DNA from: Phallusia mammillata
Lineage: Eukaryota
Assembly (NCBI GenBank): GCA_965637545.1
Contig: OZ281496.1
Coordinates: 4,092,001 to 4,156,000, forward strand
Direction of reading: 5' to 3'
DNA length: 64,000 bases
Shown: positions 452 to 59,251 of the stretch, piece after piece
Layout of the letters: the number at the start of each line of letters is the position of its first letter
Numbering within the stretch: position 1 is the stretch's first letter
Made by a program: the position numbers and the translations under genes
Notes under the pieces: generated by a model
Seen by the model: the letters and a program-made list of their open reading frames with translations, nothing else
Told to the model about the DNA's origin: nothing
Database searches by the model: none

Positions 452-606
452 ACACTCCAGCAGACAGAGGTGAAGTAAATGAAGCAGCTGGCAACATCTT
501 TCTACTTGTGATGTTTGTTCTTCTGGCTGCTGTAATTATCGCAGCCGGTTACCTCGTACGGGGCAAAATTGCTCAAGATGTAAATTCTAAACAAATTGGT
601 CTGTAG
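452..606 (+). CDS. Terminal (transmembrane + short tail) exon of an upstream A-type CUB-ZP gene (A0); rest of gene lies outside the window
   Basis: tcgcag|AC acceptor, phase 1, reads (D)TPADRGEVNEAAGNIFLLVMFVLLAAVIIAAGYLVRGKIAQDVNSKQIGL*. Paralogous to the last exons at 21867-22030 and 46893-47023; the upstream intron resembles 46370-46890. Confidence 0.85.
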
Positions 607-1868
607 ATAACTTTTCGTAATAACTTTTCACAAATAACACTGTACTGTTTCTCACGACATAAAATCGCTTTAAATTTTCGTCAAAACAACAAACTAGGCA
701 GCGATTTATTCTCAAATTTGTGAATGTTAAATTTGCTAGAGTTTTCAAAACCAGTCATTACAGTACATGTAATATTTACTGCTTTATTGTTGTCAGATAC
801 CTTGTCAAAGTTTTTTTTTGTTTCTGTGATTGTAGAACAATATAATCGGATACAATTAATTCTGTGTGTGTGTATTGGTTATATGACCACCAAAGTCACA
901 TTTTTGCTTTTCAATTTCCTAGTTTAGATTAGCATGTGTCTCTTAATTAAATTGTGATGAGAAGTATTACTAAGTTTGAAACATTGTTAGCAATTTTCAT
1001 AAAATTAGCTTGTTTTAACTCCCTTTCAAACGAGCTGTTTTTGAAACTAATTGCTACATTTGTACAATTCATGGGAACCACTAACCTACACAAAAATAAA
1101 AGTTTAGAAATGGCAGTCACAGCCAGAATGAAGTTTTATAGTCAAAACCTTTACTGAAGTATTAAATAATTTTTAGATATCAAGAGGAAATAATCTTAAC
1201 AAGCTTATGTTTGTTGGATTTTGTTAGCAAGTTGGGATTTTTTACTATGATGACTGAATACGATTTTATTTTATACTTAATGCTTCCACCGAGTGTATCG
1301 CTTGTATCCAACGTTTTATTTAGTTTCGGTTACAAACCAACCTACTGCAAACGTCTGTAATCTGATGAAGCAAATCTTCACAAACAAATACAAATTTTAC
1401 ATACTTATGTTTCGAAGAAAATCCATATCAAGTTCTTTGCTTTCATTTGACTTTAAATTTGGCGGTTTAAATCTATGGTCTGATCCATTTTCAAATTTTT
1501 ATTCATTAAATGTTAAATCGTTGAATTTTGTACTACTTTGAACCAAAGTGGCTAAACTCCTGGTCAATCGCCAAAACGTTCAGTATAACAAATTGTAAGA
1601 CGGTAAAGCGCGTACAACAACAACTTTGTGAAGCAGGACACAAAGTGAAAACGAAATGAAAAAACTCCATACAAAAACATAGGCTGAATATGTCCATATA
1701 TTTGCAAGGTACGGCAGATATGCGTGGTGCTGCAGTTTCGAGCTTAATTGTTTAATTGCTTTGTCGACCTGTTTAATATTTCAATAGCGGCGACAACTCG
1801 TTATGGAACTTTATGTTTTTCAATGTTTGTTTGGTTCTGCATGATTATGATGTACGTTGCAGCAAACG

Positions 1869-2757
1869 TTAGTTATCATGAGTTTGGTTTTGTTCTGTTT
1901 GCTGCTGGTTGTCCGGGTTTCGATCATCATCGCCATCCATTTGAGCTGGTTCTTCTGCTGGGGGTCCATTAGGGTCAAAAATGTCAAATGCAAATAGGCC
2001 TGTAAAAAAGACGCCTTAATTTAACAAAAAAATGGTTGCGTTCATCTAGATTCACTGTCAACCTTCAAATTATACTACCTACCTTGGTTTGGAGGTGGTC
2101 GGTTTACGTTGGGTGGAGGTTCCACGATATTTTCTACATATATCTACACAAGAAAATTGGATCTAAAACTGTGAATGTGTCTTAAGTATATATTTGTTTG
2201 CCAAGAATTTTACTACATGGTGACTTTACCTCTTCAGACGAGCTGGACGATGATCGCCTGAAGGAAGAATACTAAAAAAAAAATTCCGGTTACTGTTAAA
2301 ACGAAGTTGCACTCTCAAACACTGTTGCTCCATGGGCCTGAAACGCCATTGCCATTTTAACCGAGCTTACTCAAGGTAATGGTAGGAGAAGTTATTGACC
2401 CCCTTGGATTCTAGTTGGTAATAATCGTCTCGGATTTAAAATTATCTCTCAACAGACTTGCATTTTGTACCGCAGGATGTAATTTTTTTACTTACCTCCA
2501 CTCCAGAATCCAACTCCATCTCCATCTTCTGAAAGGAACAAAATACCGTGTTAACGCATTTATTATAACGATTTGTTTGTTGTTGGTTTGTAGCGGCCAG
2601 CAGATATAAAACTGGTGACCAAATACACAACAAACATTTACCGGAGGTTATTAGTCCCAGTCATACTTTTTAAACTTGACATTTTCCCTCAACAGTGTTG
2701 CATGTTTAAAAACAGAAGGTATTTTTTACTTACTCCCCTACGTGGCTGACCCTTCGT
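1869..2757 (-). pseudogene. 3' half (5 exons) of a mini-exon gene of an unrecognised family; 5' exons not found, probably truncated
   Basis: complement(join(1869..1999,2083..2143,2230..2271,2496..2528,2734..2757)), all GT-AG (donors gtaagt, gtaagt, gtaaag, gtaggt). Open 96 aa: TKGQPRRG|KMEMELDSGVE|YSSFRRSSSSSSEE|IYVENIVEPPPNVNRPPPNQ|GLFAFDIFDPNGPPAEEPAQMDGDDDRNPDNQQQTEQNQTHDN*. The 24-nt exon and its flanking introns are homologous to 63620-63980. Confidence 0.6.
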
Positions 2758-3043
2758 CTGAAAACAACATGTCACGGCGTTAGGGCATTTATTACAACGT
2801 TTCCTTCTTAGGGGTTTTTGTAGAATTTAATAGGGATTTTTTACGGTTAATTTGGTTGAACATGAACATACATTCAAAATACAAAACCCACTTAATTTCA
2901 GCTATCTGTTATTTAGTCGAAATCGTGACGTCACACAATGCGCATCAACGATATGATTCGATTCGCTCATGTAAAAAGGCTTAATGTCTATAAATTAGAC
3001 CATGGTACTGTTTTGCGATCTCAGGTATTTGTTTATGTTTTAG

Positions 3044-3162
3044 ACCGAATTGCATTCGACCATTTCGACCCAGCAGAAGAACCAGCGCCAATGGATGGAG
3101 ATGAGGTTCAAAACCCGGAAAACCAGTTGCAACCGGAACAAAACGAGCCTCATAGCAACTAA
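3044..3162 (+). pseudogene. Orphan terminal exon of the same mini-exon family, inverted relative to 1869-2757
   Basis: gttttag|AC, phase 1: (D)RIAFDHFDPAEEPAPMDGDEVQNPENQLQPEQNEPHSN*. Clearly similar to the 1869-1999 and 33085-33188 exons. Confidence 0.6.
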
Positions 3163-4453
3163 TGTTGCTGTAGATAACCTGCTACTGATGCTTAAAATGT
3201 AAATATATTCGTTGAATTTTGTTGTATTGTTTAATGCACAGATTCTTATACTGGGATCTTCGATTCTTTAGCAGCCCGTAAAGCAAATCGGGGAAAATGC
3301 CAATAGTTTAAAGTTACTATACAAGCTATTTTTATATCTTCTAAAACTGTGTATATGAAGGTGTATGTATCAAGGTACAATTTGAGGACCGTCTTCATTC
3401 GCAGAACAGTTATCCATTGCTGAAACTTTTAAAAATGCAATTGTTCGGGCACACGCTTGACGGGACTTTTTTGTAAACTTTAGCTGCCTTCGGATGAGTG
3501 ATAAGCGTAATTTCTTCAATTCTGCGTGTGGCAGTACAAATAATGGGCCATTGTTTGTTAGTTTCAGCTTTTATTTTCGAATATAATGACATTTGTGCAA
3601 ATATAATTTTGAGGGAGCTCATAATCGAGAAGTTGTTGAACCACCGGTCTAAAGCAGTGGTTCTTAACCGGCGGAAAATTATGTACAGACTGTACTACTC
3701 AATGGTACTTAAATTGTTTTTTTAAGTTTTTCTCGATAATTTAACGGTCACAATCTGCGTTTCTAGACATTTTGAGTAAGTTGGTTACTAGTCTATGTTG
3801 TCACTAGTGTTCGTGTAAATTTGGAGCAACAACATTTGCCTATTTATGCAAATAAATAGTTTATGTAATTAATTTGAGACTTAATGAAGTTACGTTTGTT
3901 TGTTTTTGGCAGTGATATACATGCATGACAAAATGCGCCACACTAATCACTAACTTTTAAACTTATTTACTTACATAAGTTTCTAAATCAAAATCCCCGA
4001 AGCAGTTTCCGTCCCACCCAAATTCACTGTCAACATCAAAATCATCCGGAAAATAAGAATCGAGGTTCTTTAGACTCAGCTTTGATTTTGAAGGACCCAC
4101 TTTATCTTTTTCTGACAAAAACACAAAAAAAGAATGTTTAGATCTTTTTTGCGCATTTTTTTCAAAAAAGCAAATTCATTTTCGAACACTATCTGTTTAA
4201 AAATTTAACGGTTAACAAAATAGACGTAAAAAGCGACATGCTTTATTTTTCAACCGTTTCGTCTAATGCTTATTTCACCATCAGTGACATGAAGGGCCAC
4301 ATCAGTTACACCCGTTTATGCGCACTTAGGTCACGTAAAAGAATGACAAAAAGGTGAAACAAGTGTCGCTTAAGAATAGTAGATAAACAAGATTTGGGCA
4401 CTCATTTTTGTCGTTAGATCATTTTAGTTTTATAATTTGAATGCATTCTAGTC

Positions 4454-4527
4454 AATTCGAGAAATTCGGGAAATTCGGGAAATTCGAGAAATTCGAGAAA
4501 TTCGAGAAATTCGAGAAATTCGAGAAA
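4454..4527. repeat. 9-bp minisatellite (AATTCGRGA)x8; 5 units in the paralogous spacer at ~34525-34570
   Basis: Direct reading of the tandem units in both spacer copies. Confidence 0.85.
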
Positions 4528-7500
4528 ATTCTTCGTGTGTTTTCCAGAAAAAAAGACCAAATTACTTGGTACCCTTCAGTTTAACTGTTACTCAATAAAC
4601 CATCGTCAATCGTGAATATGGTTTATTCTAATTAAATATGTCACTATCGTCAAATACCCACGTGTGATCCTCGGCTTTTGCGTTGCTGGTTTTGTTTTTT
4701 GTGAAATTATTTTCTGTTTTGCTGAAAACAGAAATGCTTGATTAAATACTGACACTTTTTGATACGTTCGTGACGAATTAAACGCAAAATTATGGATGAG
4801 ATATAATGACACCATACATCACGACAGCTTCACACTTTGCATAATTCCGATAAGTGGCGCAAAGAGCTGGGTTATTAATTTAACAACTATAGAGGGGTAG
4901 AGTTGGGAAGTACGTTTCTTTCAAATTTTAAATTTGCGAACTAACTTTTCAAGTTAGTTTTATTGAACCTGTGATGAAAATGTCTTACCCCAACCAAAAC
5001 AACCCTATCCGTCAGCATTTTTAGAGATATATACAATCAGAATATTTACTCATAATTACGTTTCAAGCAAGTTTAAAACGATGTACAAATATTCAAGCGG
5101 CTTTTTCCATCGCTGGAACAAGAAGTGTTTGAAAATGCAGCAGAGCACACTCCTTATGGAAACACTAGCCATGTACAAGTCTGTTAGAAAAATATGACCA
5201 TGAACTCTTTATAAAGTGTCGTTTTTCTCATACTTACTTGAACCTGAACAGAAACCCACAAAATTATTACCAGTATACGTACAATGGCTCCTTAACTTTT
5301 ATGTTTCCTGGTTAATGATTTTCGGATTCACTGGTACTTGTACTAGCAACAAAAAAAGCTTCTATTTTTTTGAAAAATATGTTTTTTATTACTTCTTTAT
5401 ATGTCTCAGAATTTATTCGCGATCGATGTTATGTTTGAAAAGCAGCTAATTTTAACTTTCTATCTTTTGTAATTTGATTTTTATCAAACAAGCCTTTTTC
5501 AACGAAACCCAGTGTGTTTGTTCAATGTACGCAAATAGACAAAAAATCTACGAGCCTGAATTTCCTATTACCTGTGTATTGTGGCGGTGAGGACATGCTG
5601 TATTCATTTTCACCGTATTTGACATTGCATGAAACCTAGATGACAAATCATTTTTTTAACGTTTTACTTTTATGTTTGATTGCTAAATACAAATTAAAGG
5701 AGAAAGACAAATTTTCTCTTAAAATTTCTTTGCATTTTTTACTACAAAGAGCTTTCTTACCCATGAATGATTGTTTTGGTAATTTAATAAGCAACGTAGG
5801 TCCTCGCAGTATTGAATTTTACTTGTTTATTATTATACGTGATGGTGGAATGAAAACAAATGAAGCATAATTGTTAATTAATAGTGTCATTATTTTAATT
5901 TCTTTACCGGTTTTACTTCAACACTTTCGGTACCAGCATTCGGAATGTTGATTGGTTGTTCCACTGTTTGATCTTTTAAAGTTAATTTCACCGTTTTCTT
6001 TTTCGCTATATTACAAAAAAAGTTTACTTTTTAATGCTTACATTAACCAATATTTTGCTTTTTAATAAACAACTTTAGATCATATAAAATGTGGAAAACT
6101 GACCTTTTTTAGTTGATCCCTTCATATTTTCCGAAGCTTCTTCTGTTTGTGATCGTTTTGAAACACGTGCATCCATAATTTAGGCAACAGACTGAGCAAT
6201 GTGAATACTAACACGCAATCAATGAATTTGCCGGTTTAATGTTGACTACTTAGGTTTTGTAGTTGACAGGTTGAAAAATGAAAATGTCTAAAAAGCTAAG
6301 ACGGTCTTGGAACACTGCAGCACAAGAAATTTAATTAAAATTAACCTTTTTCGGACCAATGATTTTGGACACAAATCAGGACCGTGTAAGTCTCTTATTT
6401 CGCGAATGCCTTTGCACTCAGAAACATGATCCGGGGCTTAACGTCGACACAGGGTCTATGTCTTTGCGTCTATGAAACAACTAAGCCTTACCTCCCGTCA
6501 TCAACACTTGTTTAATCGTCGATTTTAACTATTTTTAAAAATGTAAAAACGCAATAAAATTCTGGACCGAAACTCGCATAAAAACTGATAACAAAGTTAC
6601 TAAATTGACTTGAGCCAAATCCACAAACAACCTTTTAAACGTAAAGTTCTTGCAGAAAACGCTTTATACATTGTAAGCACACGAGCTGAACTGACGCACA
6701 GCGCAGAAAAACACAATTGGTCGCCGACATGTTACACATCAGCACGTCCAAACGTTTAATATCGTGGGTGCGTACGGGACGTAATTTGATCGTTGAAACG
6801 AAAGCTTTTGTTTGGAGCTGTTCCAAAACATTTTCCTGATGTCAGACGAAACGCTCTCTTTTAATTCATAACTGTTAGGCAGAGCAACGGCTTGAAACAT
6901 TATACAGGAGATTAAAAGCAATTTAATTAAAATTAAGCCCGTGTCAGGCTCTTATTTCTCTCAGCGTCTATGTCTTTGCGTCTGCTCATCACCTGACCCA
7001 TTTTCCTGTGCTTATCGTTTCGTTAGACCTACTTGTGTAATCGTCGATTTTAACTGTGCAAGTTGTAAAAATTTTTAAAACGCAATAAGGTTAATTCTTT
7101 AGCGAAACATTCACAATAAAATGGTAACGAAGTTACCAAGATCTACTTGAGCCAAGACAATACGCCTACAATCAACCCTTAAACTATAAAGGCCCGTTTA
7201 CACTGAGCGTAGCGTAGCGAAGCGAAGCGAACTTGGGCGAAGTTGAGCGAAGTTGAGCGAACGGGGTGTTTACACTGGACGTAGCGTAGCGAAGCGAAGT
7301 TGGGCGAACGGTTAACTTTTTGTTAAAAGTTGTACAAATACCACAACTGTTTGACGGAAGATATAAATGTTATTAATTATTTATCTGACACAAATGCCTT
7401 TATGTATGAATTGTATCAAAGTAATTTAAATTAATTGCTATTGTGACGTCATATTAACACATGTTTTGACCGGAAAATAAATATACGTTTAAAATTTAAG

Positions 7501-7533
7501 TGCTAGAAGGTATAGTTATTGCTGGATATAAAG

Positions 7534-8912
7534 ATGAACAACCGCTCCGCATTAAAAAGGGCTCGAGTAGTCCGATTACTCGCCATTCATCGCCTTTCTA
7601 GTCAGAGCAGAACAGGAAGAAGCATCTGGGTGAAACCTACCAGACAACGACGACCTGTTTTAAGTAAGTGTAGGTTGCAAAACGGACTTTAAGAAAAAAT
7701 AACATGACTGACGTTCAATCCTTTCAGGTGAATATTATCGCCTGGTACAGGAACTGCGACTTGAACAGGTTGCGGAGTTCCAATCTTACTTTCGAATGTC
7801 GCCCGCAACTTTCGACCAGTTGCTTTCGTTGGTCGGGCCTCTCGTTTCGAGACAAACAACGAATTTGCGGAGTCCTATTTCACCCGGTGAACGACTTGCA
7901 GTAACTTTAAGGTTAGTTATAAGTTGTGTTTTCTTGCACTTGATTTCAACAGTAATATTTATGTTTTTCCAGGTATTTAATCGGTGGGATGACGTACGAG
8001 AGTTTATCACATGCTTATCGTATGTCAAGAGCATCGGTATGCTTGATAATACCTGAAACTTGCCAAGCCATTTGGCAAGTTTTGCAGCCAAACCACCTGG
8101 TAAAACCGAATGAAGATGATTTCAAGCGAATTGCCTCTGATTTTCGCAGGTTATGGCATTTTCCTAACTGCCTTGGTAGCATGGATGGTAAGCACATCCA
8201 AGTACAGGCTCCTTCCAATTCGGGTTCCCTGTACTATAACTACAAGGGCACTTTTAGTGTTGTTTTGTTCGCAGTAGTTGATGCTAACTATCGTTTTACG
8301 ATGGTTGACATCGGGGGATACGGCAAACAAAGCGATGGCAGCATTTACAGCAATTCTGTATTTGGAAGGCAGTTATCAAGCCACCAATTACCAGTTCCTC
8401 CACCACAAGCCTTGCCTGGATCATCGGAGGCCCTACCATGCGTTTTTGTTGGGGACGAAGCGTTTCCGTTACAGGAAAACTTGCTTCGTCCTTACCCAGG
8501 GAGGCAATTATCCCACCGCCAACGGGTGTTTAATTACCGGCTTTCTAGAGCCAGGCGCATCGTAGAAAACGTATTTGGTATAATGGTTTCCCGCTTCCGG
8601 GTGTTTCGCGGGCCGATTTGTTTGGCACCAGAAAGGGTGGATAATGTGGTAAAGGCGTGCGTCGTTCTTCACAACTTCCTTCGCCATGAAAGCATGTACG
8701 TTGGACCGAGTGATCTCGACCACGAAGACAGAAGTGGCGAATTACATCCAGGCAGTTGGCGCGACGAGCAAGAAAATAGTCTAGGGTGCATTCAAAGGGT
8801 TGGGCGACGCCATAGCACGCAGGCATTTGAAGTGAGGGAAAAGTTTGCCGAATACTTCTGCAGCGAAACAGGATCTGTGTCTTGGCAAAATGCCATTATT
8901 TCAAGGTGTTAG
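7534..8912 (+). CDS. Harbinger DDE transposase (HARBI1-like), 417 aa, 3 exons
   Basis: join(7534..7663,7728..7911,7973..8912) = 1254 nt, open. Motifs FRMSPATFDQL, ISPGERLAVTLRYL, GSMDGKHI, YYNYKGTFS, VGDEAFP, RARRIVENVFG, LHNF; the D-D-E triad is intact. Confidence 0.93.
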
Positions 8913-9151
8913 TTAGTTTGCATGTAAACGGCTCTTTTTAGAGCCATGTTTGTCCTGTAACTGTATGTCTATATGTCTGTTTGTGGGAAAGTTGATGGCA
9001 ACCTTCACGTGGTCTTTCCTGTTACAGTGTGAAAACACGAACCAATGCCATCTTAGATTAACTTCATGTTTATTTAAAACAACAATAAAAAATAAAATCG
9101 AAAACTAAAATATGTTGTGAAACAAAGCACTGCCCTACTGTAGTGAAAATT

Positions 9152-13800: not shown

Positions 13801-14388
13801 CAGACTGTTACTCCCAACAAACTGGAGTGGCGTTACAAAAAAACAGCAGCTGCAATGACGGGACTTGTGGATTAAAACAATGGGCACTGTGTGCAGCTTG
13901 CTTCCGCGGAGTTTGAAAAAAGAACGACGACTCACGTGAACAACGTAATACGCGTTTTAACCCAGTTAGATGTAGCGGCATCGATACAGGGTAAGCGTCG
14001 CAACTGTATTGATCCGGTTTGAATCACCTGCGTTGTGTTGCGGGGCTTGCGGTGTGTACGACTGTTTATTAGACCACAGTGTGTTATAATGTCGAAAAGG
14101 AAATTGGCGCATACGAAGAGTTGCAGCTGAGAGGTAGCATTATAAGACTTGTATTGCTAAAATGATTTAGGCAAAGTTGTTGCCACACTTGACTAAACAA
14201 GTTCAAATAAAACATGTTTAAATATAGAAAAGCAAAAATATGCGTACGTAGTATATGTGCAAATATATATAGTTGTAGGTTATATTGGTAGTAGTAACTT
14301 AGTATGTTTAATGATTTATATGTATTGTATATTAGCAGGTATAGTTGATGTATCAAACAGTTGTGTTTTGTCAAACAAAACGTCCAAA

Positions 14389-24058: not shown

Positions 24059-24141
24059 CCCTAATGTGACATGTTTGTTGCAGAGGGTGCAGATTTCAGG
24101 TACTTAGTGATATTGCTGTTAATTATATCTCCAAAGTAAAA

Positions 24142-46500: not shown

Positions 46501-47023
46501 GGTTGCACTTACCACTTGGCCATTTTGGCAACTCATGCATGGCCCTTAATGTAGTTTTTTTCGTTTTTTTGAAGTTTTGTATAAAAAACATACTCCACAC
46601 CGTCATAACCAGCAAACTTAAATTAAAAGTTACTTCAAAAAAGAAACACTTAATTCCGAATAATGGTAAGCGGTGAGTTCGAATCCCACCATTAACTGAT
46701 TCTTTACAATCTGAAGTGTATTGAGAATCAACTCGATTCGGCGTTAAATATTTTGCAAACTTGGCCCACTTCGAAGTATACATAAGAGTGGTATTAATTT
46801 TAGTCTGTATGCAGTTTTTAATCTCTAGTTCAGGGGCAAATGCTTTCGCACGCATATATGTTTATCTAAGTTAAACTATCTTTTTATCGCAGACACTCCA
46901 GGAGACAGAGTTGAAGTAAATGAAGCAGTGTATAACATCTTTCAACTACTGATGTTTGTTCTTCTGGTTGCTGTAATTATCGGAGCTAGTTACATTTTGT
47001 GGGGCAAAATAGCCCAGATGTGA
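40517..47023 (+). CDS. Gene A2: paralog of A1, 584 aa, 13 exons, cytoplasmic tail shortened by a 1-nt deletion
   Basis: join(40517..40577,41134..41300,41873..42023,42285..42460,43074..43227,43621..43669,44187..44352,44569..44726,44931..45102,45328..45398,45502..45691,45933..46041,46893..47023) = 1755 nt, open. Exons 1-12 are identical in size to A1; the exon 2 acceptor is AAG. Confidence 0.88.
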
Positions 47024-48797: not shown

Positions 48798-48868
48798 CCG
48801 TAATGTGAAATGTTTTGCAGATTTTAGGTAGTTAATGACATTACTGTTTATCATTTTCCAAGGTAAAA

Positions 48869-51800
48869 ATGTCAAGTCGACTATTAAAAGCGGCGCTTTT
48901 TCTCAGCGCTCTGAGTATGCTGCACCGAGGTTAGTGAATTGATTGATTTTCTTTGTAACTTTAACTTGTGTGGTATGCATGATAATCAAATTGTGGCAGT
49001 ACGGTAAGATTAAACTTTGCAGTGCTGTTTTCTGGAGGATCACGGGTGTAAGATTACTAGAAACATCTTTTAAAAGAAAAGCCCTGAATCAAAGCATAAA
49101 CTAATAAAATAAAAAGCTCATATTCCGCGTTATTTTGGTCACAAGTCGTTTTACAGCAAAAATAGTAGACCACTGCAAGTGTTAAAATAAGCACATCTAG
49201 ACAAGCAGCGGGGAGTCCAACATTGCAACTCCAGTCGCTACACCGCCATCATTTTGGTCCTTGGGTTTCGAACAGAGCAGATGTCCAGCAGCGTAATTCT
49301 CCAGCATCCAAGGTAGACTCCGTATATTCCTAATTCCGAAATAACTTCTTCCTTTGTGGCGGTTCCACCACAAATGGCATAGTTCGGAGTCGGTTTTGGA
49401 TTGATAAGATCCATGAGGGTGTAGGCACTACGTCGGCTGTCGTTTCCGATTTCTCTCAACAGTTTTGCGATGTCTTCGCCATAAATGTTGTTTCCTCCCC
49501 CTTCGCGTTGTGGTTTCAAAACATATTTTTGTGGATTTTCAATTGCCATCTTATATAATATGAGCTTTTATAACAATTGCTTATATAATAAAAAATGGCT
49601 CTGAAACAACGTATTGCGAGCGACAAGAGAGAAAAAACGGCGGGATTTGTTGAAAATTAATTACACAATAACAAAGGACATCCGAAAAGAATTGCGCTCG
49701 TTACAAAACGATCAAGCTGAACTAAAGTCCGAAATTTGATGGAGAGAGCGGACGTAAAATGTCGCGGAAAACCGGGCTGACAGCCCGCTGTTCTTGCGCT
49801 TTCTCGCTTGTTGCTCGCAATACTCATTCATTGCTCTGATGAAGCCTTGTCGTTGTGATTGGCGAAACGTTAACAAATACAAGTTCTTGAAACAACAACT
49901 AGTGTTTTGTTTAGCATTACACCAGTTGAATGACAAATTTGTTAGATATGCAATCTGGTGGACAAAATGCTTGTTCAGTATTTTCTATGATTTTTATCGC
50001 TGTTTACAACGAGGCATGTCTCGATGCGTCTTTCAATTATGAAAAAAAACTCTTTTAATATTTATGTGTTTTTTTGTTTGTACACCAACCAAGTAGTATC
50101 CCATATACCCGTTATGTCACATGTTGAATACCTTGTCATCATGCACAATGAGAGCTTTTCCGTTATATTTTCGAATATTACAATATATATTTTCTTAAGT
50201 TGAAAGCTTTGGAAAATGTTGGCTTAAACCAAATTGGGCGAAATACACCATCGTGTCAACACTGGTATATAGGGTTAGTTCGGATATCAATAATTTCCAC
50301 TATCCGGAAAACGGATATATATACGGATATTTTGAATTTAGCTATTCGGTTAACCAGATAATAATAAGCCTGTTACAAAATCATTCAATTGCGGCACAGA
50401 TTTCGTTTCAGTGTTTATAATTGTCCGGCATATATCAAATTTACGCTATTTAATTACTGCTTAAGCAGTGTAGTTCTGAAAAAGCATGATACATCAGTTG
50501 TTTCATATTTTGCCCTACAGTCAATTTTCAGAGAGAAAATAAGCCCCAAACTTTGTTATTAAACGTATACATTTCTTTTTCGAATCTCAAAATTTATCCT
50601 TTCGGGCAAAGCACCTTACAATGGATGCATTTTCTATTTTATAAGTGTGACTTCAATTCTCTCGTGAATTTTAACATCAGTATAGGGAAATGTACAACAA
50701 CATCAGTAGGGAATATGTACAACAAAGTGAATATTCGTATTAATTAGGATTAACATAAAGTCGTCTGTTGCATCTGTCACTGCACAGTAACTGCGTGTTT
50801 TCTAAAATTATGTTAAAATGCATAAAATGCTTACGCAGGCAGCTCTATTCTTTTGTTATTCGGTTAACCGACACAAAAATATACGGATATCGGATAGCAA
50901 AAAACTCTTCGGTTATTCGGTTAACCGGTTATCCGTTATCCGGATAATTCAACCCTACTGGTACAGGATGTATGGGAGCATAAGCATTTTATACTGTTTT
51001 ACTTTTAAATGTTTTTAGGTTCAAACACACAGTGTGGAGTGCGGAATGTAAGCGGTACCTCTCATTCTACAACAATTTCCTCCGCCTGTAACTCCTGGGC
51101 CCGACGATTTGTTTCCACTGGAGTTTCCTCGAGGTTAATTGCCGATTTACGTTCGGGGCAGCTTGCTGAAAACAACTTTTGTGAGGTAAAATTTTACAAA
51201 CGTTGTTCTTGAAATGATCTTAATTTGAAATTCACCCGTTCGTTACCTCGTACATTCGAATTTCATTTCTTACAATAAGGATTTTGATACGCATTCCTAA
51301 CCTCAACGTAAGCAAAAAAATAGATTTACGAGGGAACCGACGACCAAGGTAAATTGGTTGGAACGTTGGAAGGTGGAGGTTTTTCTCTTCCAGTTTTCTT
51401 TGAAAGCTCATCTGCATATATATCTTGTGTCACAAACCTCACATCGGAATCTGTGTGGTTTTATCTACAACCATGTAAGTCAGGCTTTCGATTCATTTAT
51501 AACCGAAACGTAAAGTATGTAGATGAAACATGGTTTCGTGTCGGTATCAGGAACAAATAAAATGATGTCAAATCTATTATTTTGCAGACAAACATAACAA
51601 TTAATGGAATAAAAGTATAATTTGCAAACATAGTTTTAATAAACAATCAAAGCGTAGTTTATGAGCGCTTTTCAAAAAGTAGTGATACTCCATTGCGTAT
51701 CGGATCGTCAACTAGACAAAAGTCACATGAAATTGACAACTCGATGTTCATAACAACTGCTTGGAACTATTTTTACTAGCTGCTAATCTTTTTGTGATTT

Positions 51801-54800
51801 TTAGTTTCTTGCGGGGAAGATGTTGCTGATATACCGTACAATTTACTCTCTCCAAGCTTTCCTAGCAACTACCCTAACTCTGTTGTTTGTGTTTGGAGAT
51901 TTCAAATGAATATCAGCACAACAATAGTGTTCCAATTCTCCACATTTTACACTGAGGGCTATACCGACTTTCTATACGTAAGTGTCTCAACGCATATTAT
52001 AAACTAATTTTGGGTTTGCAGGAGATGAAATCCAGACATAAGAAGATTTAGCGTGAAAAATGAGCGTAGTGTAAAGAAAATATTTTTTCTCTCATTATTG
52101 AAAATGGTAATATTGTCGACGCATATAATCGAGTGGAAACGGTTGGTCATTTTTAGGAGATTTTCCGCAATACGTATGAAATTAATATATGTTCATTTAA
52201 AAAAAACTGGATTTTTTAGAAACCTATTTATTATAAACTGCATTTCCAGGTGGAAAAATTGTTTCTAATATTAAGAAAAGCAATAAATATGCTTAAGGTG
52301 GCAGAAATCCTATTATTGTCAAGTGCCTAATTTAATGATATGAAGCTTGTGGCTTTTAGGAGATATGCGGACTTTTAGAACAATTATTAGGGCTATCAGT
52401 GGCTAAATATTAGCATTTTTTGACAAACCTAAAATAACTAAATATTGTACTGTTTTCAGTTCAAGAACGAAGAAGGTAAAGTGGACCAATTTTCCGGGTC
52501 GCTTGGGTCATTTAACCACACGGTGACAGCAACAAATCTTACTGTTGTGTTTGAGAGCGACTATAGCATTCAAAACAGAGGATTTAAAGCGACCGTAGGT
52601 GAGCTAAATCTGCTTTCAGGCACAAAATTTCGTAATGCAAATGTTAAAATTAAATACCTTGTCATACGGCACAACTAGAGATTTAGCGTTATGTTTTCGA
52701 ATATTGAATAATATATTTTGGTAAATATGAAAGCTTTGGAATGTGTTGACTTAAATAGCCAAATTGAGCAAAATACGCCGTCGTGCCAAAAGTGGTACAG
52801 AATGTAAGGGATCATAAGCTTTTTATACTATTTTACTTATAAATGATGCTTATATCATTTCGTTTCAGGCACACCGTGTGGATTTCATAATTCAAGCAGT
52901 AACTCCTATGGTGCAAGAATTTCCCCCAACTGTAACACATGGGGCCTACGATTTGTTTCAACTGGAGTTTCCTCTCGGTTCATCGCCTATTTCGGTTCGG
53001 GACAGCTTGCTGCAAACAACTTTTGTGAGGTAAAACTCTACAAACTTTGTCTTTAACTGAGATTAATTTGAAATTGTCCGTTCTTACCCCGTAGGTTTGA
53101 TTTACATATTTTACAATTGTTATTTAAATACTTGCTCTTAACCTCATGCGTAAATCGTAAACAAACAAAATCTAGATTTACGAGGGATCTGATGATCGAG
53201 GTAAACTGGCTGGAACGTTGGAAGGTGGAGGCTTATCTTTTCCGGTTATCATTGAAAGCTCGTCTGCTTATATATCTTGTGTCACAAACCTCACATCGGA
53301 ATATGTGTGGTTTTGGCTGAACCCACGTAAGTCAAGCTTACGATTCATTTATAGCCGAAACTTATGTAACCGAAATTAGTTGGGTGATCCCGAATTCGGC
53401 CTAGGATTTTTTTGAGGGGCGAGATGGTTATCTTTTACTAAATATAACTAGCTTACCCAACCCTAACCACAATTATAGCGGGATCCCCGACCCTAACTTG
53501 GTAAATACCGAAAACGAAACATGGCAGTCACAAAGTCACGTGATCTGAACACCCAATTACAACGCACAAGCGCAACACCTCGATATCTAAATCATTGGTA
53601 ATTGATTTGATTACGGCAATTGATTAAGGAAGTGAATGAAGCGCTGCATAAGAACGTGTTAAGTATGAAATGTGAAATACAAATACAAAAAATGAAGTTG
53701 AACAAAAATGTACGTAAACAATATTAACAAAAGTGTGCGTGGTTGATAATAGAAAAAGTTTACGTGATTAATATTAACAACATATAAACAAGTTACATAT
53801 AAACAAATAGTGAGGAAAATCATAGGAAACACAACTGTGTGATTAATGCAACAAACTATAACTATTAAAAGTGCTTAAATAAGACAAAGAAATGTTGTGC
53901 AATAAAGAAAGAAAATAACAATGTGTGTACGCGCACATTACACTTAAACCATGCAGATGAAACATGTTTTCGGTTCGGTAGGAACAAATAAAATGGTGTC
54001 AAATCTATTTTTTGCGCTCAAATATAACGAATAATTGAATAAAAGTGTATTTTGCCGACACAGTTTTAATGTACAATAAAAGCGTAGTTTATGAGCACTT
54101 TTCAAACAGTGGTGATTTTCCATTGCTTATCGGATCGGCAACCAGACATAAGTCAAAGAAAATTGACGACACGATGACCAAAATAACTGCTTAGGACTAT
54201 TTTTACTAGCTGCACTGTCTCAAGCTAATCTTTTTGTGTTTTTTAGTTACTTCGTGCGAGGAAGATGTTGCTGATATACCTTACAACTTACTCTCCCCAT
54301 TGTATCCCAGAAACTACCCCAACTACGCTGGTTGTATTTGGAGATTTCAAATGAATAGCAGCAGAACTTTGGTGTTCCATTTTTCCAAATTTTACATTGC
54401 GAACTGCTGCGACTCTTTATACGTAAGTGTCTCAACGTATAACATATCCTAAAAATCCAGGAGAGGGAATCCCAAAATGAGAATTTTTTGCGTGTAAAAT
54501 GAGGATAGTGCAAAGAAAATGTGTTTTTTCTCCCATTTTTTGAAAGGATAATATTGTTGACGCATATAATGTGGAAGAGTGGAAACGGCTTTTCATCTCT
54601 ATAAGATATTCTGACATACGCACTGAATTAATAGATGTTTTATTTTATTTTGGTAAACAGGATTTTTAGAATGTTTATTATTTATTCCAGTGCGGATTTC
54701 AGTGAGTTCCCTTCCAATATTAAGAAAAGCAAGAAATACCTTTAAAGTATCAAAAATCCAGATTTTCAAGCACCTAATTTGATTATGAGAAACTTGCGGC

Positions 54801-57800
54801 TTTAAGGAAGTATGCGGCCTTTTGGGGCAACAAGTGCGACCCTCTGCGGCTAAAAATTAACATTTTTATTGTGTTGAGTTCAAAAACGAAGCGATATTAA
54901 CATTTTTATTGTATTAACATTTTTATTGTTTTTAGTTCAAAAACGAAGCGGGTATTGTGGACAAATTTTCGGGGCGGCTTGGGTCATTTGATTACACGGT
55001 GACAGCAACAAGTCTCACTATCTTGTTTGTGAGCAGCTATAGTCATAGGTCGAGTACTGGATTTAGGGCGACAGTAGGTGAGACAAATCTCTTTTTAGGC
55101 GCAAAATGTAAACATGCAAATGATTAAAATACACTTGAACTCAGCCAGCATGCGTTATAGGTTAAGGGTGGTCTGAAAATAAATTTTCAATATATGTTTC
55201 AAAAACTTGAATTAACAAATTAAATTTGATGTGTTGAAGTAAATTTTAATCCACAAAAGGCAGAATAGTGCTCGAACTTCTATATTTCGTTCACAAATTG
55301 TTTTTTATATATATACAGTAGAAACACAATCATCAGTTGAATGTAGGACTGAAAACTTGATCATCAGGTAGGTTACTATTTTCTTTTTAATTATTTTGTG
55401 AAATTTATTGATAATTGTTGAAAGTAATATTCAGAAGATTGTTGAAAAAATTGTAGTACTTCAAGCATTTTGTTGTGCTGCCTGTTTTGTCATCAGCCTG
55501 CAATTGCTTGTTTTTTATTGATTGAGACATCTTTTACTTATCAGCAATGGGTCTTCTAATGGGATGCCGCTAGAAAAACTGCAACATAGTATAGATGTTT
55601 GGAAAATGAAAAAAATAACTGGTTGTCTAGACGGGTGACATTAAAACGCTGAATGGGCGGGATGGGCGGGATGGGCGGGACGAGTGGGCAACCGCTAAAT
55701 ATCGGGTAAATTGCTGACGGTTAGTGCTATTAGGGTTGGGTTGAGGTTTTATAATAGTATATGAATCAAAACAATGTCCCTGCCTAAAACTTATTCAGCT
55801 ATTTCCTGACATTCGGCAAAAATGCTATGGCGGGAGATTGCCTGACGTCTCAGGCGCAAGATGTTTAACTCGGTTGCGGAATGTATCCGGCGGAATTATT
55901 TTTAATGATTTTCTATTACAAAACCTTATCCCAACCTTAATAGCTCTAACCGTCAGCAATTTAACCCGATATTCAGCAGTTTTCACGACGTCCCGCCCAT
56001 TCAGCGTTTTAGTGTCACCCGTCTAGACTTATAAAATGTACATAAACTTAACAATCCAATATTCGCAGAGTAACAGCTTATCAACAGAACAGATTAGATT
56101 ACGAACTCGACGACACTCTTTACATCGCATTGGACAGGGATACCTCCCTTTCTCAACTCAATGACAGCTGCAAGGTCACGGGGTCAAACCCAGTGTTTAC
56201 GTTTGACATTGGCCAATGCAAAGGTGTTTTTAAGGTAAAATTGGATTTTGTTCTGAACTCATAGACTATATGTCCTTATTATTTTTTAAGACAACATTAT
56301 CCGTTTGGGGGTAATAATAAAGTGTAATAAGCTTTTATTGCTGCATAATAAAAAGCTGCCAGCTTTGAAATATGTAATTTTCGTGCTCTTATACAGAATG
56401 CAAACGGTACGGTGTCGGTGTCTTTCCTGATCTGGAGATACCTAGCTCCATCCCCTGCAGTGATCCAGCGTGACGTTCAAAACAAGCTCAATGTGACTTG
56501 TTTATTTGACGCGAACCTTCTTATCTCGTCATCCCAAATTAGTACACAAATCGGGTAAGGAAAAGAAAAACAAACCATTATATAACAGCTATAGAGTGGC
56601 ATTCGGCACAAGACAACATGTACAAGACACACAGTAGGTGTCATAAAACGTAACACGTGGTCTTTTGTTGACAACACTTGGAAACAAATTGACAAAAGTA
56701 AAACAGGATGTTGCACATGACAAAAACATCCAACCACTCCACGAATGGCATACGGCTGTGGACACATTACACACGACACAGAACACATAAATCTACCCTT
56801 GGCACAATACACCTGCCCCCCACGACATGAAATACGGTAAAACTATATCACATCTGCAACATGTCACAAAGCATGCACCCAACAGCACCTGCCACACTAT
56901 GTATGACACGGATCACAGTTTGTCTGTCCTTCTATTTTTCGGTAATTTCGGTTGTTATGTGCACTTTGCCATATTAGGTGGCAAAATCGTTACGGGGTGG
57001 CTTAGTACTTCTCAGATAATGCCAAAATGTTGTGGAGAGGGGGTTTGTATTGCTTTCTTTTGTAGATACAATTTCTGATACAATCAAAGCACAACATGAT
57101 GATACAAAAAAGGACAGAATTGATTCTGTACGTTTCTAAAGACATGGTTTTAATGAACTTTGTTATTTTGCTTTTAAAAACCCCGCGAGCACCTAAGGAG
57201 TTAAAAACAGTGAGCTGTTTGTTAAACTTTTATATGTTTTAGATTTGACGAAATTTTTGAAATTTTCAACGAATGCTTCAACGAGAGCTTGCCCAGAGAA
57301 GTAACTGTACCCACCTACATTTTTGCTAAACTTAAACTTGATGAGATCTCTGCAGCCGATGATTACTTTATTGTCCAGGTGAATTGAAAAAAAAACTGCT
57401 TTTTGTGCAAGAAAACATTGCATTCTTTGATTTAATATACATTATTCTGGCATCTTTGGTCTAGTTTGCAATTTATACTTGAAAGTGGAATACCTTTTTG
57501 CACAGCTGGAAGGCTGTTGGGCGACACGCAATGAAAACTCCGATAGTTTGCCGAGTTACCAAATTGTACAAAGCGGGTAAGATATACTTGAATTACCTCA
57601 ACACATGTTTTTCTTAGTAGCGAGTTTATTTGTTTAGTGATTAATTTTGTATCTGTATTTCACTATGATTAACCCAGCATCGAAACTATTAGATGCGTTG
57701 CGCCACCCAGTGGAGGAGAGGCTGCCGACGCGAAGGCGTTGATACGAAATTACGAATCCAACTTTGCAACTTTCAAGCTGATGAGCTTTGTGTGGACAAA

Positions 57801-59251
57801 CTTTACCGACGCAGAACAATTTATTTACATCCACTGCGACGTGACCGTCTGTCATAATTCAACTGGACAATGCCCTGGACAGGTGACTTGATTAAAGTAG
57901 AGTTTGTACTTGCAACAGAGAATAAAGTTTAGCAAAATAGTGTTGGTCGAAAAAAAAAGGTCAAGGAAAATGATATGTTTTTTTTTCAGAACAAAATTCC
58001 TGAGTATTGCTCTAAAACAATCGAGATAGTATGTCTCTAAATAACTTAAGAATTTATTTGGCGTTTGTGTCCAGTTGTAGCATTAAAATTATTAGTGTGG
58101 AATGGCTTTATATTCTGTTGCTTCCATACCAAAGTTTTCTAGGTTCGTTTGCCAATACGGTTTATTTCCTGTCACCAGTTGATTTTATGTGGCTAATCAG
58201 CAAAAAGGCTGAATGGTCCGGCGCGCCTGAATCATAACATAACCTTGATAGGAATTCGACCCCCATCCTATTTGGAATCCGAACCACAATAAAAATACGA
58301 GGTTTACTGTGTGTAGCTTACATACAAATTTGAAAGTAATTTTAACCCTTTTATTTGGTTGGAGTGCGAGCAACGGTAAATATTCCGCCACAGGCTACGC
58401 TGTCCTATCTTGAAATCGCTAGGGATACCGGCCCTTAATCGGCCTGGAGAACTATGATGTAAATATATGTGTGCCGGGATGGGCTTAATTCTGTATGACG
58501 CCTTCAATGAAACTGGTGTACAATGAAATATCAATATTTGTATGATTCTTTTTGCAGTCTTGTTCTGGTAAGAAACGGCGATCTGTTGAAAACAATCGCC
58601 GCAATCAACTGCTTTCTGCAGGGCCAGTACACATTGTTCAAGATACCGCTTTCCAACTTGGTAAGACAATGAGAAAAATTTAATCTCTTTTCTAGATAAT
58701 ATTGCTGATACACGTGCTTTTGCTAAACGAATTTGTAGTTCTAGCAAGCAAGTCGCACCTCTTGGGGCATAATGACATAAGTTTTCGAAACATTTTCTCG
58801 GTTTAATATACTGTGTCTTGGTGATTGATTAGTTGGATGTATATGTGATTAATTTGACTGCTAACATTACCAACCGCACCTTTTATTCGATTTTCATAAG
58901 TTGTTTTAAAAATAAGACTGTAACTAGCATTAAAGGACACATATAAAAGGCAAATAAAATAAATGTTTGTCACAAAATATATTTCATGAGTTCGAATCCC
59001 ATCACTTGTTTTCTTTTTTTTTGTATCCGCTAATCAATCAGTACAGTTCTTCCCATATTTTTTGCTATATTTGTTAATTATGACTTTTTGTCTCTTATAC
59101 AACAGGAGAAAGAAATGAAGCGATGGAAGGAGCCGGCAACAGCTACCAACTTGTGATGTTTGTTCTTCTGGCTGTGATTGTTATTGGAGCTGGTTACATC
59201 GTATGGGGCAAACTGACCCGGGATCGCAATGCGAGACAAAATCGCCAGTAG
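48869..59251 (+). CDS. Gene B2: signal peptide - (CUB-like - CUB)x2 - ZP - furin site - TM, 778 aa, 17 exons
   Basis: join(48869..48929,51019..51185,51324..51474,51805..51977,52460..52598,52869..53029,53176..53326,54247..54422,54936..55077,55322..55367,56069..56234,56397..56554,57243..57378,57506..57576,57693..57882,58558..58660,59106..59251) = 2337 nt, open. Three splice sites differ from B1 and are inferred. Confidence 0.78.
49197..49549 (-). pseudogene. GSS: Glutathione synthetase C-terminal fragment with a frameshift, in B2 intron 1
   Basis: YVLKPQREGGGNNIYG...ISELGIYGVYLG, then after a frameshift MLENYAAGHLLCSKPKDQNDGGVATGVAMLDSPLLV*. These are hallmark eukaryotic GSS motifs; no intron lies within the fragment. 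Confidence 0.85.
50270..50957. mobile_element. hAT-type non-autonomous element, 688 bp, in B2 intron 1
   Basis: TAGGGTT...AACCCTA ends; TSD CTGGTATA / CTGGTACA; subterminal CGGATA and CGGTTAACCG repeats; empty site in the duplicated cassette near 52795. Confidence 0.8.
53365..53942. mobile_element. 578-bp solo-LTR-like insertion in a B2 intron
   Basis: TGTAA...TTACA termini and apparent 4-bp TSD CTTA; absent from the equivalent introns of B1 and B2 cassette 1; its first ~250 bp match, inverted, the regions ~23020-23470 and ~47650-48120. Confidence 0.5.
55631..56022. mobile_element. MITE, ~392 bp, in a B2 intron
   Basis: About 30-bp TIR ACGGGTGACATTAAAACGCTGAATGGGCGGGA / TCCCGCCCATTCAGCGTTTTAGTGTCACCCGT; TSD CTAG (or TA); empty site gtCTAGactt in B1 near 27620. 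Confidence 0.85.

What the first reader, a model, noticed from the sequence alone, without database searches (positions are those of the whole stretch)
452..59251. Tandem A/B array of CUB-CUB-ZP-TM genes: candidate diversified extracellular recognition locus
Seen: four complete genes plus the tail of a fifth, all on the + strand, in the order A0-spacer-A1-B1-spacer-A2-B2, with shared exon phases; A1 and A2 start codons are 26128 bp apart. Each gene has a signal peptide, CUB-like + CUB domains, a 10-Cys ZP module, a KKRR furin-type site, an EHP-like SAGPVH segment and a TM. Established: ZP modules polymerise into egg coats and mucus-type matrices after furin cleavage, CUB domains mediate ligand binding, and vertebrate CUZD1 has this architecture. 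Inference: a lineage-specific expansion that displays variable CUB heads on a conserved ZP filament, e.g. for gamete, microbe or self/non-self recognition.
Basis: partly seen in the sequence, partly recalled or inferred. Interest (0 to 1): 0.75.

Follow-up and report, generated by a model that had tools for sequence, protein, structure and literature searches.

The report
Sea-squirt CUB-CUB-ZP gene array
The window holds four intact, intron-rich sea-squirt genes, plus the tail of a fifth, for membrane-anchored filament-forming (ZP) proteins with two CUB-type binding heads; they belong to an array of over 100 copies on one chromosome, a large expansion of a known protein type whose tissue and ligands are unknown.

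Summary
All five units are on the + strand at the stated coordinates, and the A1 and A2 start codons are 26,128 bp apart. The genes have 13 exons (17 in B2), every intron is GT-AG, and all frames are open.

**Domains.** Pfam recognises the second head as CUB and the ZP-C domain. The first head is CUB-like only by a middling fold model of a 30%-identical relative. The ZP module has 10 Cys, a KKRR site, a SAGPVH strand and a TM segment. Its nearest solved relatives are uromodulin and GP2.

**Transcription.** RNA-type contigs lie on exons only and confirm the splice joints. They come from paralogs, so expression of these four copies is not shown.

- The locus is a small piece of an array on contig C3: about 87 of at least 105 genomic copies lie between 2.9 and 5.8 Mb, on both strands.
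- That array is built from segmental duplications of about 100-130 kb. A1 has ten copies at 98-99% identity elsewhere.
- The heads vary 2-5 times more than the ZP part. The hottest loops flank a conserved calcium-site triad and evolve at about the neutral rate.
- The ZP half also has 2-3 times lower synonymous divergence, so gene conversion contributes to its uniformity.

Function in gamete, microbe or self recognition is untested. Earlier follow-ups in this scan found the same family on other DNA.

The parts
452..606 (+). A0: last exon (acidic linker, TM segment, short tail, stop) of the upstream family member
   Evidence: 68% identical to the A1 last-exon peptide. The acceptor CAG lies just before 452. 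The rest of A0 lies upstream of the window. Exons 4-11 are found there, but no exons 1-3 within 4.1 kb.
607..14388 (.). Spacer 1, including a Harbinger/PIF transposon insertion at 7191-11245
   Evidence: 3763-7191 and 11245-14530 are 92-98% identical to 33820-40646. It holds no family exon remnants, all E>0.03. The DDE_Tnp_4 ORF at 7956-8909 scores E 5.6e-36. Copies of 12000-13000 occur only beside other family members on C3.
14389..22030 (+). A1, 13 exons, 595 aa: signal peptide, CUB-like domain, CUB domain, ZP-N, ZP-C, KKRR (21117-21128), SAGPVH (21162-21179), TM (about 21914-21982)
   Evidence: Exons: 14389-14449, 14605-14771, 15326-15476, 15890-16065, 18008-18161, 18620-18668, 18959-19124, 19346-19503, 19708-19879, 20392-20462, 20673-20862, 21105-21213, 21867-22030. 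All introns are GT-AG and the frame is open. Pfam finds CUB and ZP-C. Exon 4 matches cubilin CUB domains at E 2.3e-18.
24142..30549 (+). B1, 13 exons, 575 aa, same architecture
   Evidence: Exons: 24142-24202, 25312-25478, 25626-25776, 26107-26282, 26676-26814, 27315-27360, 27668-27833, 28026-28183, 28611-28782, 28910-28980, 29097-29286, 29758-29842, 30404-30549. RNA-type contigs give GT..AG joints at 25478/25626, 28183/28611, 28782/28910 and 29286/29758, and exon starts at 26107 and 27668; introns have zero depth.
30550..40516 (.). Spacer 2, homologous to spacer 1 but without the transposon
   Evidence: Self-comparison. No family exon remnants.
40517..47023 (+). A2, 13 exons, 584 aa, same architecture with a shorter cytoplasmic tail
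   Evidence: Exons: 40517-40577, 41134-41300, 41873-42023, 42285-42460, 43074-43227, 43621-43669, 44187-44352, 44569-44726, 44931-45102, 45328-45398, 45502-45691, 45933-46041, 46893-47023. It is the window model closest to the database cDNA-derived fragment P0001, at 73% over 271 aa and collinear.
48869..59251 (+). B2, 17 exons, 778 aa: head cassette (CUB-like + CUB) duplicated, ZP-C start shortened by 12 codons
   Evidence: Exons: 48869-48929, 51019-51185, 51324-51474, 51805-51977, 52460-52598, 52869-53029, 53176-53326, 54247-54422, 54936-55077, 55322-55367, 56069-56234, 56397-56554, 57243-57378, 57506-57576, 57693-57882, 58558-58660, 59106-59251. The second CUB lacks the Glu and the last Asp of the calcium triad. 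56939-57267 does not align to B1.

Best explanation
These are genes for type I membrane glycoprotein precursors built like vertebrate CUZD1: signal peptide, a divergent CUB-like domain, a calcium-site CUB domain, a 10-Cys ZP module of the uromodulin/GP2 kind, a polybasic cleavage site, an external hydrophobic patch and a membrane anchor.

**Most likely mechanism (inferred from uromodulin and egg-coat ZP proteins).** The precursor reaches the apical or outer cell surface. A convertase- or hepsin-type protease cuts at KKRR. The SAGPVH strand and the anchor are lost. The freed ZP modules then polymerise into extracellular filaments that display the CUB heads. Those heads would bind partners through the conserved Glu/Asp/Asp calcium site, with specificity set by the variable flanking loops.

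**Genomic picture.** The four genes are a small sample of an array of at least 100 genes on one chromosome. The array grew by tandem duplication, by direct and inverted segmental duplications of about 100-130 kb, and by duplication or loss of the head cassette. Gene conversion keeps the ZP half similar while the heads drift apart.

**What is shown and what is inferred.**
- Shown: gene structure, domains, family size, splicing of family transcripts, and the pattern of variation.
- Inferred: cleavage, polymerisation, calcium-dependent binding, and any physiological role.
- My guess for the site of action is an epithelial or mucosal surface matrix at about 40%, the egg coat at about 35%, and other at 25%.
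For: **Genes and domains.**
- The models are intact and share phases.
- CUB and ZP-C are over Pfam cut-offs on single exons.
- Exon 4 matches cubilin and MASP CUB domains, with its Glu aligned to their 'F.lE' Glu.
- A profile of relatives hits uromodulin at E 1.3e-23 and GP2 at 2.1e-22. The GP2 match spans ZP-N and ZP-C, and the uromodulin alignment printed there runs through the cleavage site to the 'GP' patch.

**Fold models.**
- The family member P0001 gives a ZP-C core at pLDDT 71-88, a disordered loop at the polybasic site, a strand at RLSAGPVHIVQ and a TM helix.
- Its 30 best Foldseek matches are all ZP-C domains, including uromodulin and GP2 filaments.
- Domain 1 of the relative P0013 folds as a beta sandwich. 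Most of its top 20 matches are CUB domains at Z 8.1-9.8.

**Transcription.** Contigs lie on exons only, with GT..AG joints. P0001 is collinear with exons 7-11.

**Family.**
- There are at least 105 exon-9 copies at 78% identity or more, about 87 of them in C3:2.94-5.84 Mb.
- There are 99 exon-3 copies, at 39-100% identity.
- A1 has ten copies at 98-99% identity, in both orientations.

**Selection and variation.**
- dN/dS is below 1 in every domain.
- Column entropy is 0.8-1.4 bits in head exons against 0.24-0.57 in ZP exons. The triad is conserved and the flanking loops are hypervariable.
- dS is 2-3 times lower in the ZP exons.
- An island at exon 4 is 95.7% identical between A1 and A2, with flanks at 73-74%.
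Against: - No tissue, protein or cleavage data exist.
- Expression of these four copies is not shown. At many positions every contig differs from B1.
- Domain 1 has no Pfam hit and no significant profile similarity to domain 2 (hhalign E 0.18). Its CUB fold rests on a middling model (pLDDT 59-73) of a 30%-identical relative.
- KKRR has Lys, not Arg, at P4, and some paralogs have only GRRS, so furin itself is not certain.
- B2 lacks the first strand region of ZP-C.
- Several of the 20 sampled paralogs are fragments.
Confidence: 0.7

Rival explanations
1. Egg-coat (vitelline coat) components. Oocytes or accessory cells would secrete many CUB-ZP subunits into the coat, where the variable heads take part in sperm binding, species specificity or self-sterility.
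For: - Ascidian vitelline coats are built of ZP proteins. Eleven were found in the Ciona coat, and polymorphic ZP genes are expressed in oocytes (PMC8849226, read).
- Family transcripts occur in all four RNA-type runs laid.
- Fast-changing heads fit reproductive proteins.
Against: - None of the coat proteins named in the two reviews read has CUB heads.
- No tissue label could be obtained.
- Loop dN/dS is about 1, not clearly above it.
- More than 100 copies with many 98% duplicates is more than known egg coats use. This last point is my own knowledge, not a test.
Confidence: 0.3
2. Mucosal or epithelial decoy and barrier filaments, like uromodulin, GP2, CUZD1 or DMBT1. Gut, pharynx, endostyle or epidermis would shed filaments whose varied heads capture microbes or particles.
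For: - The nearest solved ZP modules are uromodulin and GP2. They score far better than ZP2 or ZP3 (1e-23 and 2e-22 against 1e-10 to 1e-11).
- The architecture equals CUZD1, and NCBI gives that name to a Clavelina relative.
- Exon 4 is most like the ligand-binding CUBs of cubilin.
- Large, rapidly duplicating arrays are typical of invertebrate immune-type families. This point is my own knowledge.
Against: - There is no expression or binding evidence.
- Tunicate egg-coat ZP proteins are not orthologs of vertebrate ZP1-4, so the better score to uromodulin does not exclude a coat role.
Confidence: 0.35
3. Non-polymerising surface receptors. The ZP module would serve as a membrane-proximal stalk or co-receptor, as in endoglin or betaglycan, and the proteins would stay anchored.
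For: All four genes keep a TM segment and a short cytoplasmic tail. Betaglycan ZP-C is among the fold matches.
Against: - The polybasic site and the SAGPVH patch are conserved across 24 paralogs, just before the anchor.
- A complete ZP-N + ZP-C with 10 Cys resembles the polymerising uromodulin and GP2 type.
- The tails carry no conserved motif and differ in length.
Confidence: 0.1
4. Mostly a by-product of an unstable, duplication-prone region. Recent segmental duplications would have multiplied genes of which few are used, and many are decaying.
For: - Ten A1 copies at 98-99% identity and inverted blocks.
- Among the 20 sampled paralogs, eight lack several exons (L001, L004, L005, L006, L011, L012, L013, L015; L011 also has an assembly gap), including three tandem 3' fragments in L004 and the 5'-truncated A0 type.
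- B2 has a damaged ZP-C start.
- No contig evidence shows that the window copies themselves are expressed.
Against: - All four window genes and at least 7 of 20 sampled paralogs have complete open frames with canonical splice sites.
- dN/dS is 0.15-0.7 in every domain.
- The calcium triad, the cysteines and the processing motifs are conserved.
- Many different paralogs are transcribed: 124 contigs in run X6, across identity classes.
Confidence: 0.15

Closest known systems
Vertebrate CUZD1 (CUB and zona pellucida-like domains 1)
   Same: The domain order is the same: signal peptide, two CUB-type domains, ZP module, cleavage site, TM. NCBI's pipeline gives this name to a Clavelina relative.
   Different: Orthology is not shown. 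The 22 nearest proteins in 1.84 billion representatives are mostly tunicate proteins and none is named CUZD1. Domain 1 is too divergent for Pfam. The copy number is above 100, against one or a few, and some paralogs have 4-6 heads or none.
Uromodulin and GP2 (polymerising ZP filaments of kidney and pancreas/gut)
   Same: They are the best sequence and fold matches to the ZP module. They share the 10-Cys type, a cleavage site followed by a 'GP' hydrophobic patch, and a C-terminal anchor.
   Different: Their heads are EGF/D8C domains, not CUB. They are GPI-anchored rather than TM-anchored (my own knowledge). They are single genes.
Ascidian vitelline-coat ZP proteins (HrVC70/120, CiVC57)
   Same: They are tunicate ZP-module proteins with a C-terminal TM and proteolytic processing (PMC8849226 and PMC9265791).
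   Different: Their heads are EGF repeats (with vWF in CiVC57), not CUB.
Tunicate relatives: P0013 and P0001 (Phallusia mammillata), P0003/P0007/P0011 (Clavelina), and shorter ZP proteins of Ciona
   Same: P0001 is 65-73% identical and collinear with exons 7-11. P0013 is about 30% identical over the full length with the same domain order. The Clavelina proteins are 26-34% identical over 210-530 residues of the ~640.
   Different: The Clavelina and some Ciona proteins carry an extra EGF-like (FXa_inhibition) domain before the TM. The Ciona hits are only 176-460 aa long, too short for two heads; one of them (P0010) was domain-scanned and showed ZP-C plus that EGF-like domain but no CUB. None is known as a large array.
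Cubilin and MASP/C1r/C1s calcium-binding CUB domains
   Same: Exon 4 matches cubilin CUB5-8 at E 2.3e-18. The Glu of 'F.lE' aligns, and the Asp residues of the triad are conserved in the family.
   Different: The second CUB disulfide is absent; domain 2 has only 2 Cys. Calcium binding is untested.

Membership tests
ZP-module proteins | ZP-C domain recognised by profile | tested here: met
   PF00100 is over its cut-off on exon 9 alone (27.8 and 29.2 bits). It scores 77.7 bits on the family member P0001. The fold model matches only ZP-C domains in the top 30.
ZP-module proteins | ZP-N domain with four conserved Cys ahead of ZP-C | tested here: met
   Four Cys lie in exons 5b, 6 (two) and 7 in all four genes. 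A profile of relatives aligns to GP2 over ZP-N plus ZP-C (profile 227-531). There is no Pfam hit on single exons.
ZP-module proteins | Consensus cleavage site, external hydrophobic patch and membrane anchor after ZP-C | tested here: met
   KKRR, SAGPVH and one hydrophobic segment are present in all four genes. They are conserved in 24 paralogs, with variants RKRR, MRGRR and VGRR. The model puts the patch in a strand and the site in a loop.
ZP-module proteins | Polymerisation into filaments after cleavage | not testable with these tools
   This needs protein expression and electron microscopy.
CUB domain (domain 2) | Profile match over the curated cut-off and the calcium-site Glu/Asp/Asp | tested here: met
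   PF00431 scores 39.1 and 33.2 bits on exon 4 and continues on exon 5 at profile positions 52-109. Exon 4 matches cubilin at E 2.3e-18. The triad is conserved in the paralog alignment except in B2's second CUB.
CUB domain (domain 1) | CUB beta-sandwich fold | tested here: inconclusive
   There is no Pfam hit, and hhalign against domain 2 gives E 0.18. A model of the homologous domain of P0013 (pLDDT 59-73) matches PCPE-1, TSG-6, neuropilin and cubilin CUBs at Z 9.3-9.8, but PliG ranks first at Z 10.4. The window's own domain could not be folded, because spliced models were not submitted.
CUZD1 orthologs | Same domain order | tested here: met
CUZD1 orthologs | Orthology to vertebrate CUZD1 (reciprocal best match or phylogeny) | not tested
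   No CUZD1 sequence was on hand. The nearest hits in the representative search are tunicate proteins.
Egg-coat ZP proteins | Expression in oocytes or accessory cells and presence in the coat | not testable with these tools
   Run and sample labels are coded. No paper was found.

The most novel reading that the evidence does not exclude
The megabase array would be a germline-encoded recognition repertoire. More than 100 ZP filament subunits would differ mainly in the loops around a calcium-dependent CUB binding site. They would be used either in the egg coat for gamete or self/non-self discrimination, or on mucosal surfaces as a diversified microbe-trapping mesh. Segmental duplication, cassette shuffling and gene conversion would act as the diversity generator.
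Probability: 0.2. Interest if true: 0.8.

Novelty: new member of a known kind. Interest (0 to 1): 0.4.

Why it matters
Filament-forming ZP proteins with binding heads build egg coats and mucosal barriers, and CUZD1 itself is poorly understood. A chordate relative that has multiplied this design more than 100-fold offers a natural experiment in how a ZP scaffold can present diverse binding heads. Variation is focused beside a conserved calcium site, and the filament half is homogenised. The array is also a clear case of domain-specific concerted evolution inside a megabase of segmental duplications. If the family proves to be an egg-coat or mucosal recognition repertoire, it would bear on ascidian fertilisation specificity or invertebrate-chordate immunity. 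As it stands, it is a well-documented lineage-specific expansion of a known architecture. I found no paper on it in the library searched.

Tried and rejected
- **Eleven-exon models failed.** The exon 5 donor (phase 1) and the exon 6 acceptor did not fit. RNA-contig joints revealed two extra small exons.
- **Word-index protein search gave nothing new.** This says nothing about absence.
- **Fragment rows misaligned.** Alignments that mixed full-length relatives with single window exons were badly misaligned and were not used for folding.
- **Domain 1 against domain 2.** hhalign was not significant.
- **Domain 2 of P0013 did not fold** (pLDDT about 30), so nothing is read from it.
- **Only 20 paralog loci were fetched.** They are biased towards copies that resemble the references.
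- **No family remnants in the spacers**, so the spacers are not dead genes.
- **No alternative signal-peptide exon was found for A0**.
- **The species is not settled.** The Phallusia mammillata cDNA fragment P0001 finds its best genomic match at only 80-95% amino-acid identity, at C3:1.625 Mb. I therefore do not assert the species.
- **Literature searches found nothing** on ascidian CUB-ZP proteins, LOC100182005, or CUZD1 in tunicates.
Full report
**What is in the window.** The window is G000:C3:4092001-4156000 of a 240-Mb genome. Earlier notes of this scan call it a sea squirt, and my protein hits agree.

Self-comparison shows a duplicated unit:
- 3763-7191 and 11245-14530 match 33820-40646 at 92-98% identity.
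- 14579-30903 matches 41108-59601 at only 72-90%.

The extra 4 kb in the first spacer (7191-11245) is a Harbinger-type transposon. Its ORF matches DDE_Tnp_4 at E 5.6e-36. Exon-sized open frames on the + strand recur in the order A0 tail, A1, B1, A2, B2.

**Gene models.** An eleven-exon reading did not close the frame between the second CUB exon and the first ZP exon. I laid contigs of four RNA-type runs on B1 at 80% likeness. They lie on exons only and all sampled intron bins have zero depth. They give GT..AG joints at 25478/25626, 28183/28611, 28782/28910 and 29286/29758, and exon starts at 26107 and 27668.

The contigs also revealed two small exons I had missed:
- a 46-nt exon at 27315-27360
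- a 71-nt exon at 28910-28980

With their homologs, all four genes become complete ORFs with canonical splice sites and identical phases:
- A1 14389-22030, 595 aa
- B1 24142-30549, 575 aa
- A2 40517-47023, 584 aa
- B2 48869-59251, 778 aa

The joined models were assembled only inside local scripts from the window file, for frame checks, local alignments and substitution counts. Those searches used single exons by reference, or proteins returned by the tools. The joined-search step is therefore left out.

**Domains.**
- *CUB (domain 2).* Pfam finds CUB over its cut-off on exon 4 (1e-9 and 7e-8), continuing on exon 5. Exon 4 of A1 matches cubilin CUB5-8 at E 2.3e-18, and its Glu aligns to the 'F.lE' Glu of cubilin and MASP.
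- *ZP-C.* Pfam finds ZP-C over its cut-off on exon 9.
- *ZP module.* It has 4 + 6 Cys, followed by KKRR, then SAGPVH and a single hydrophobic segment. There are 8-14 N-glycosylation sequons per protein.
- *Nearest solved structures.* A profile of relatives hits uromodulin (1.3e-23) and GP2 (2.1e-22; that match covers ZP-N and ZP-C), far ahead of ZP3 and ZP2. The uromodulin alignment runs through the cleavage site to the 'GP' patch.
- *Fold model of P0001.* It has a ZP-C core at pLDDT 71-88, a disordered loop at the polybasic site, a strand at RLSAGPVHIVQ and a TM helix. Its 30 best Foldseek matches are all ZP-C domains.
- *Domain 1.* It has four Cys and the same two-exon, phase 1-0-1 layout as domain 2. 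It has no Pfam hit and no significant profile similarity to domain 2. The homologous domain of P0013 gave a middling model (pLDDT 59-73). Most of its top 20 matches are CUB domains at Z 8.1-9.8, although PliG ranks first. 'CUB-like' is therefore reasonable but not proven for the window's own sequence.

**Relatives.** An exhaustive HMMER search with exon 9 found only 22 proteins. The best of them are tunicate proteins:
- P0001 is a 278-aa Phallusia mammillata fragment. It is 65-73% identical and collinear with exons 7-11, which independently supports those joins.
- P0013 is from Phallusia, 597 aa, about 30% identical over the full length, with the same order of parts.
- The Clavelina proteins are 635-646 aa and carry an extra EGF-like domain. 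NCBI names one of them CUZD1.
- The Ciona hits are shorter ZP proteins of 176-460 aa. The one I domain-scanned (P0010) has no CUB head.

P0001's best match in this genome is only 80-95% identical, at C3:1.625 Mb. The species is therefore not settled.

**The larger picture.**
- Exon 9 has at least 105 copies at 78% identity or more. About 87 lie in C3:2.94-5.84 Mb, on both strands, and ten are identical in protein to A1's.
- The whole A1 gene has seven full-length copies at 98% nucleotide identity and three split copies at 98-99%. They are spaced about 97-135 kb apart, some inverted.
- A1's nearest kin are therefore not in the window. The A/B 'array' is a fragment of a megabase array made of large, recent segmental duplications.
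- Exon 3 has 99 copies spanning 39-100% identity. Some genes have three head cassettes.
Two of these loci contain 200-N gaps, which I left as they are.
- Seven of the 20 gave complete ORFs automatically. Five lack only one tiny exon in my search. The other eight lack several exons; among them are three tandem 3' pieces in L004, the A0 type without exons 1-3, and L011, which also has an assembly gap.

**Pattern of change.**
- Within the window, dN/dS is 0.45-0.70 in the heads and 0.15-0.50 in the ZP module. It is never above 1.
- Across 13-24 sequences per exon, mean pairwise identity is 0.47-0.69 for head exons and 0.77-0.90 for ZP exons.
- Column entropy is 0.8-1.4 bits in head exons against 0.24-0.57 in ZP exons.
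- The hot spots are the stretch between the first two Cys of domain 1, and in domain 2 the residues flanking the conserved Glu, Asp ('F.x.E.x.x.D') and Asp ('SD').
- Those loop columns give dN/dS of 0.69-1.07, against 0.20-0.27 for the rest of the same exons. I chose the columns for their variability, so this shows neutral-rate change, not proven positive selection.
- Synonymous divergence is 2-3 times lower in ZP exons (0.26-0.47) than in head exons (0.85-1.05).
- ZP-region introns of A1 and A2 are also more alike than head-region introns. A 254-bp island at exon 4 is 95.7% identical between flanks of 73-74%.
- Gene conversion therefore helps to keep the ZP half uniform, alongside purifying selection.

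**Expression.**
- Run X6 gave 124 contigs across identity classes; the other three runs gave 2-5 each.
- The joints prove that spliced family transcripts exist.
- At many positions every contig differs from B1, so I cannot say that the window's own copies are expressed.
- Sample labels are coded, and no tissue could be inferred.
- One DNA-type run labelled as another organism holds 35% of the words. I did not follow this up.

**Interpretation.** The genes encode CUZD1-like precursors of a uromodulin/GP2-type ZP polymer that carries calcium-site CUB heads. Cleavage, polymerisation and ligand binding are inferred from the conserved motifs and from what is established for uromodulin and egg-coat proteins.

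The claim of a recognition function is open. I found no paper on such a family in ascidians. The reviews I read describe ascidian coat ZP proteins with EGF heads.

Other follow-ups of this scan reached the same family on other stretches of this genome. They reached similar conclusions: mosaic evolution, hypervariable calcium-site loops, a hypervariable exon 2, and a headless paralog. My tests were made independently on this window and on 20 other loci, and they agree.

**Verdict.** This is a real and carefully observed locus. It is a lineage-specific, very large expansion of a known protein architecture. Interest is moderate because tissue, ligand and adaptive diversification are all untested.

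Noticed in passing
window 7191-11245 (ORF 7956-8909, +): A Harbinger/PIF-type transposon is inserted in the first spacer only. Its 318-aa open frame matches DDE_Tnp_4 (E 5.6e-36). It contains 107-bp tandem repeats at 10108-10436.
   Followed up: partly
window 16248-17006 (tRNA-like at 16422-16497 and 16779-16854, - strand): A 355-bp tandem duplication in A1 intron 4 carries two tRNA-Ser(GGA)-like sequences (46.5 bits). Copies at 95-99% identity lie on contigs C1, C4 and C5, so it looks like a young tRNA-derived SINE.
   Followed up: partly
window 59966-61111 (- strand): A 382-aa ORF just after B2 has only a weak GIY-YIG hit (E 0.0038). It may be a mobile-element gene.
   Followed up: no
window 15880-16133 versus 42275-42528: Exon 4 of A1 and A2 is 95.7% identical while the flanking introns and exons are 73-74% identical. 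This is a short gene-conversion tract.
   Followed up: partly
window 51019-55077 and 56939-57378: B2 has its four-exon head cassette duplicated, and the second CUB has lost two of the three calcium-site acidic residues. The 5' end of its first ZP-C exon is replaced by unrelated sequence, which removes 12 codons.
   Followed up: partly
L015 (C3:4083698-4093598), with twins at C3:2.97 Mb (-) and 3.285 Mb (+): The A0 gene has exons 4-11. No exons 1-3 or signal-peptide exon were found within 4.1 kb upstream. The same truncated type recurs in other duplication blocks.
   Followed up: partly
L004 (C3:5717145-5727045, - strand): Three tandem 3' gene fragments (exons 8b-11) repeat with a period of about 4.15 kb.
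   Followed up: no
C3:3430088-3434457 and C3:4581186-4585555: Three copies of head exon 3 lie within 4.3 kb. These paralogs probably carry three head cassettes.
   Followed up: no
window 4436-4612: A hexanucleotide-type simple repeat in the spacer reads as (REI)n, (NSR)n or (KFE)n in the three frames.
   Followed up: no
window 24060-30600, run X3: A DNA-type run labelled as a different organism holds 35% of the 31-letter words of the B1 region. That suggests a very close relative or a labelling difference.
   Followed up: no
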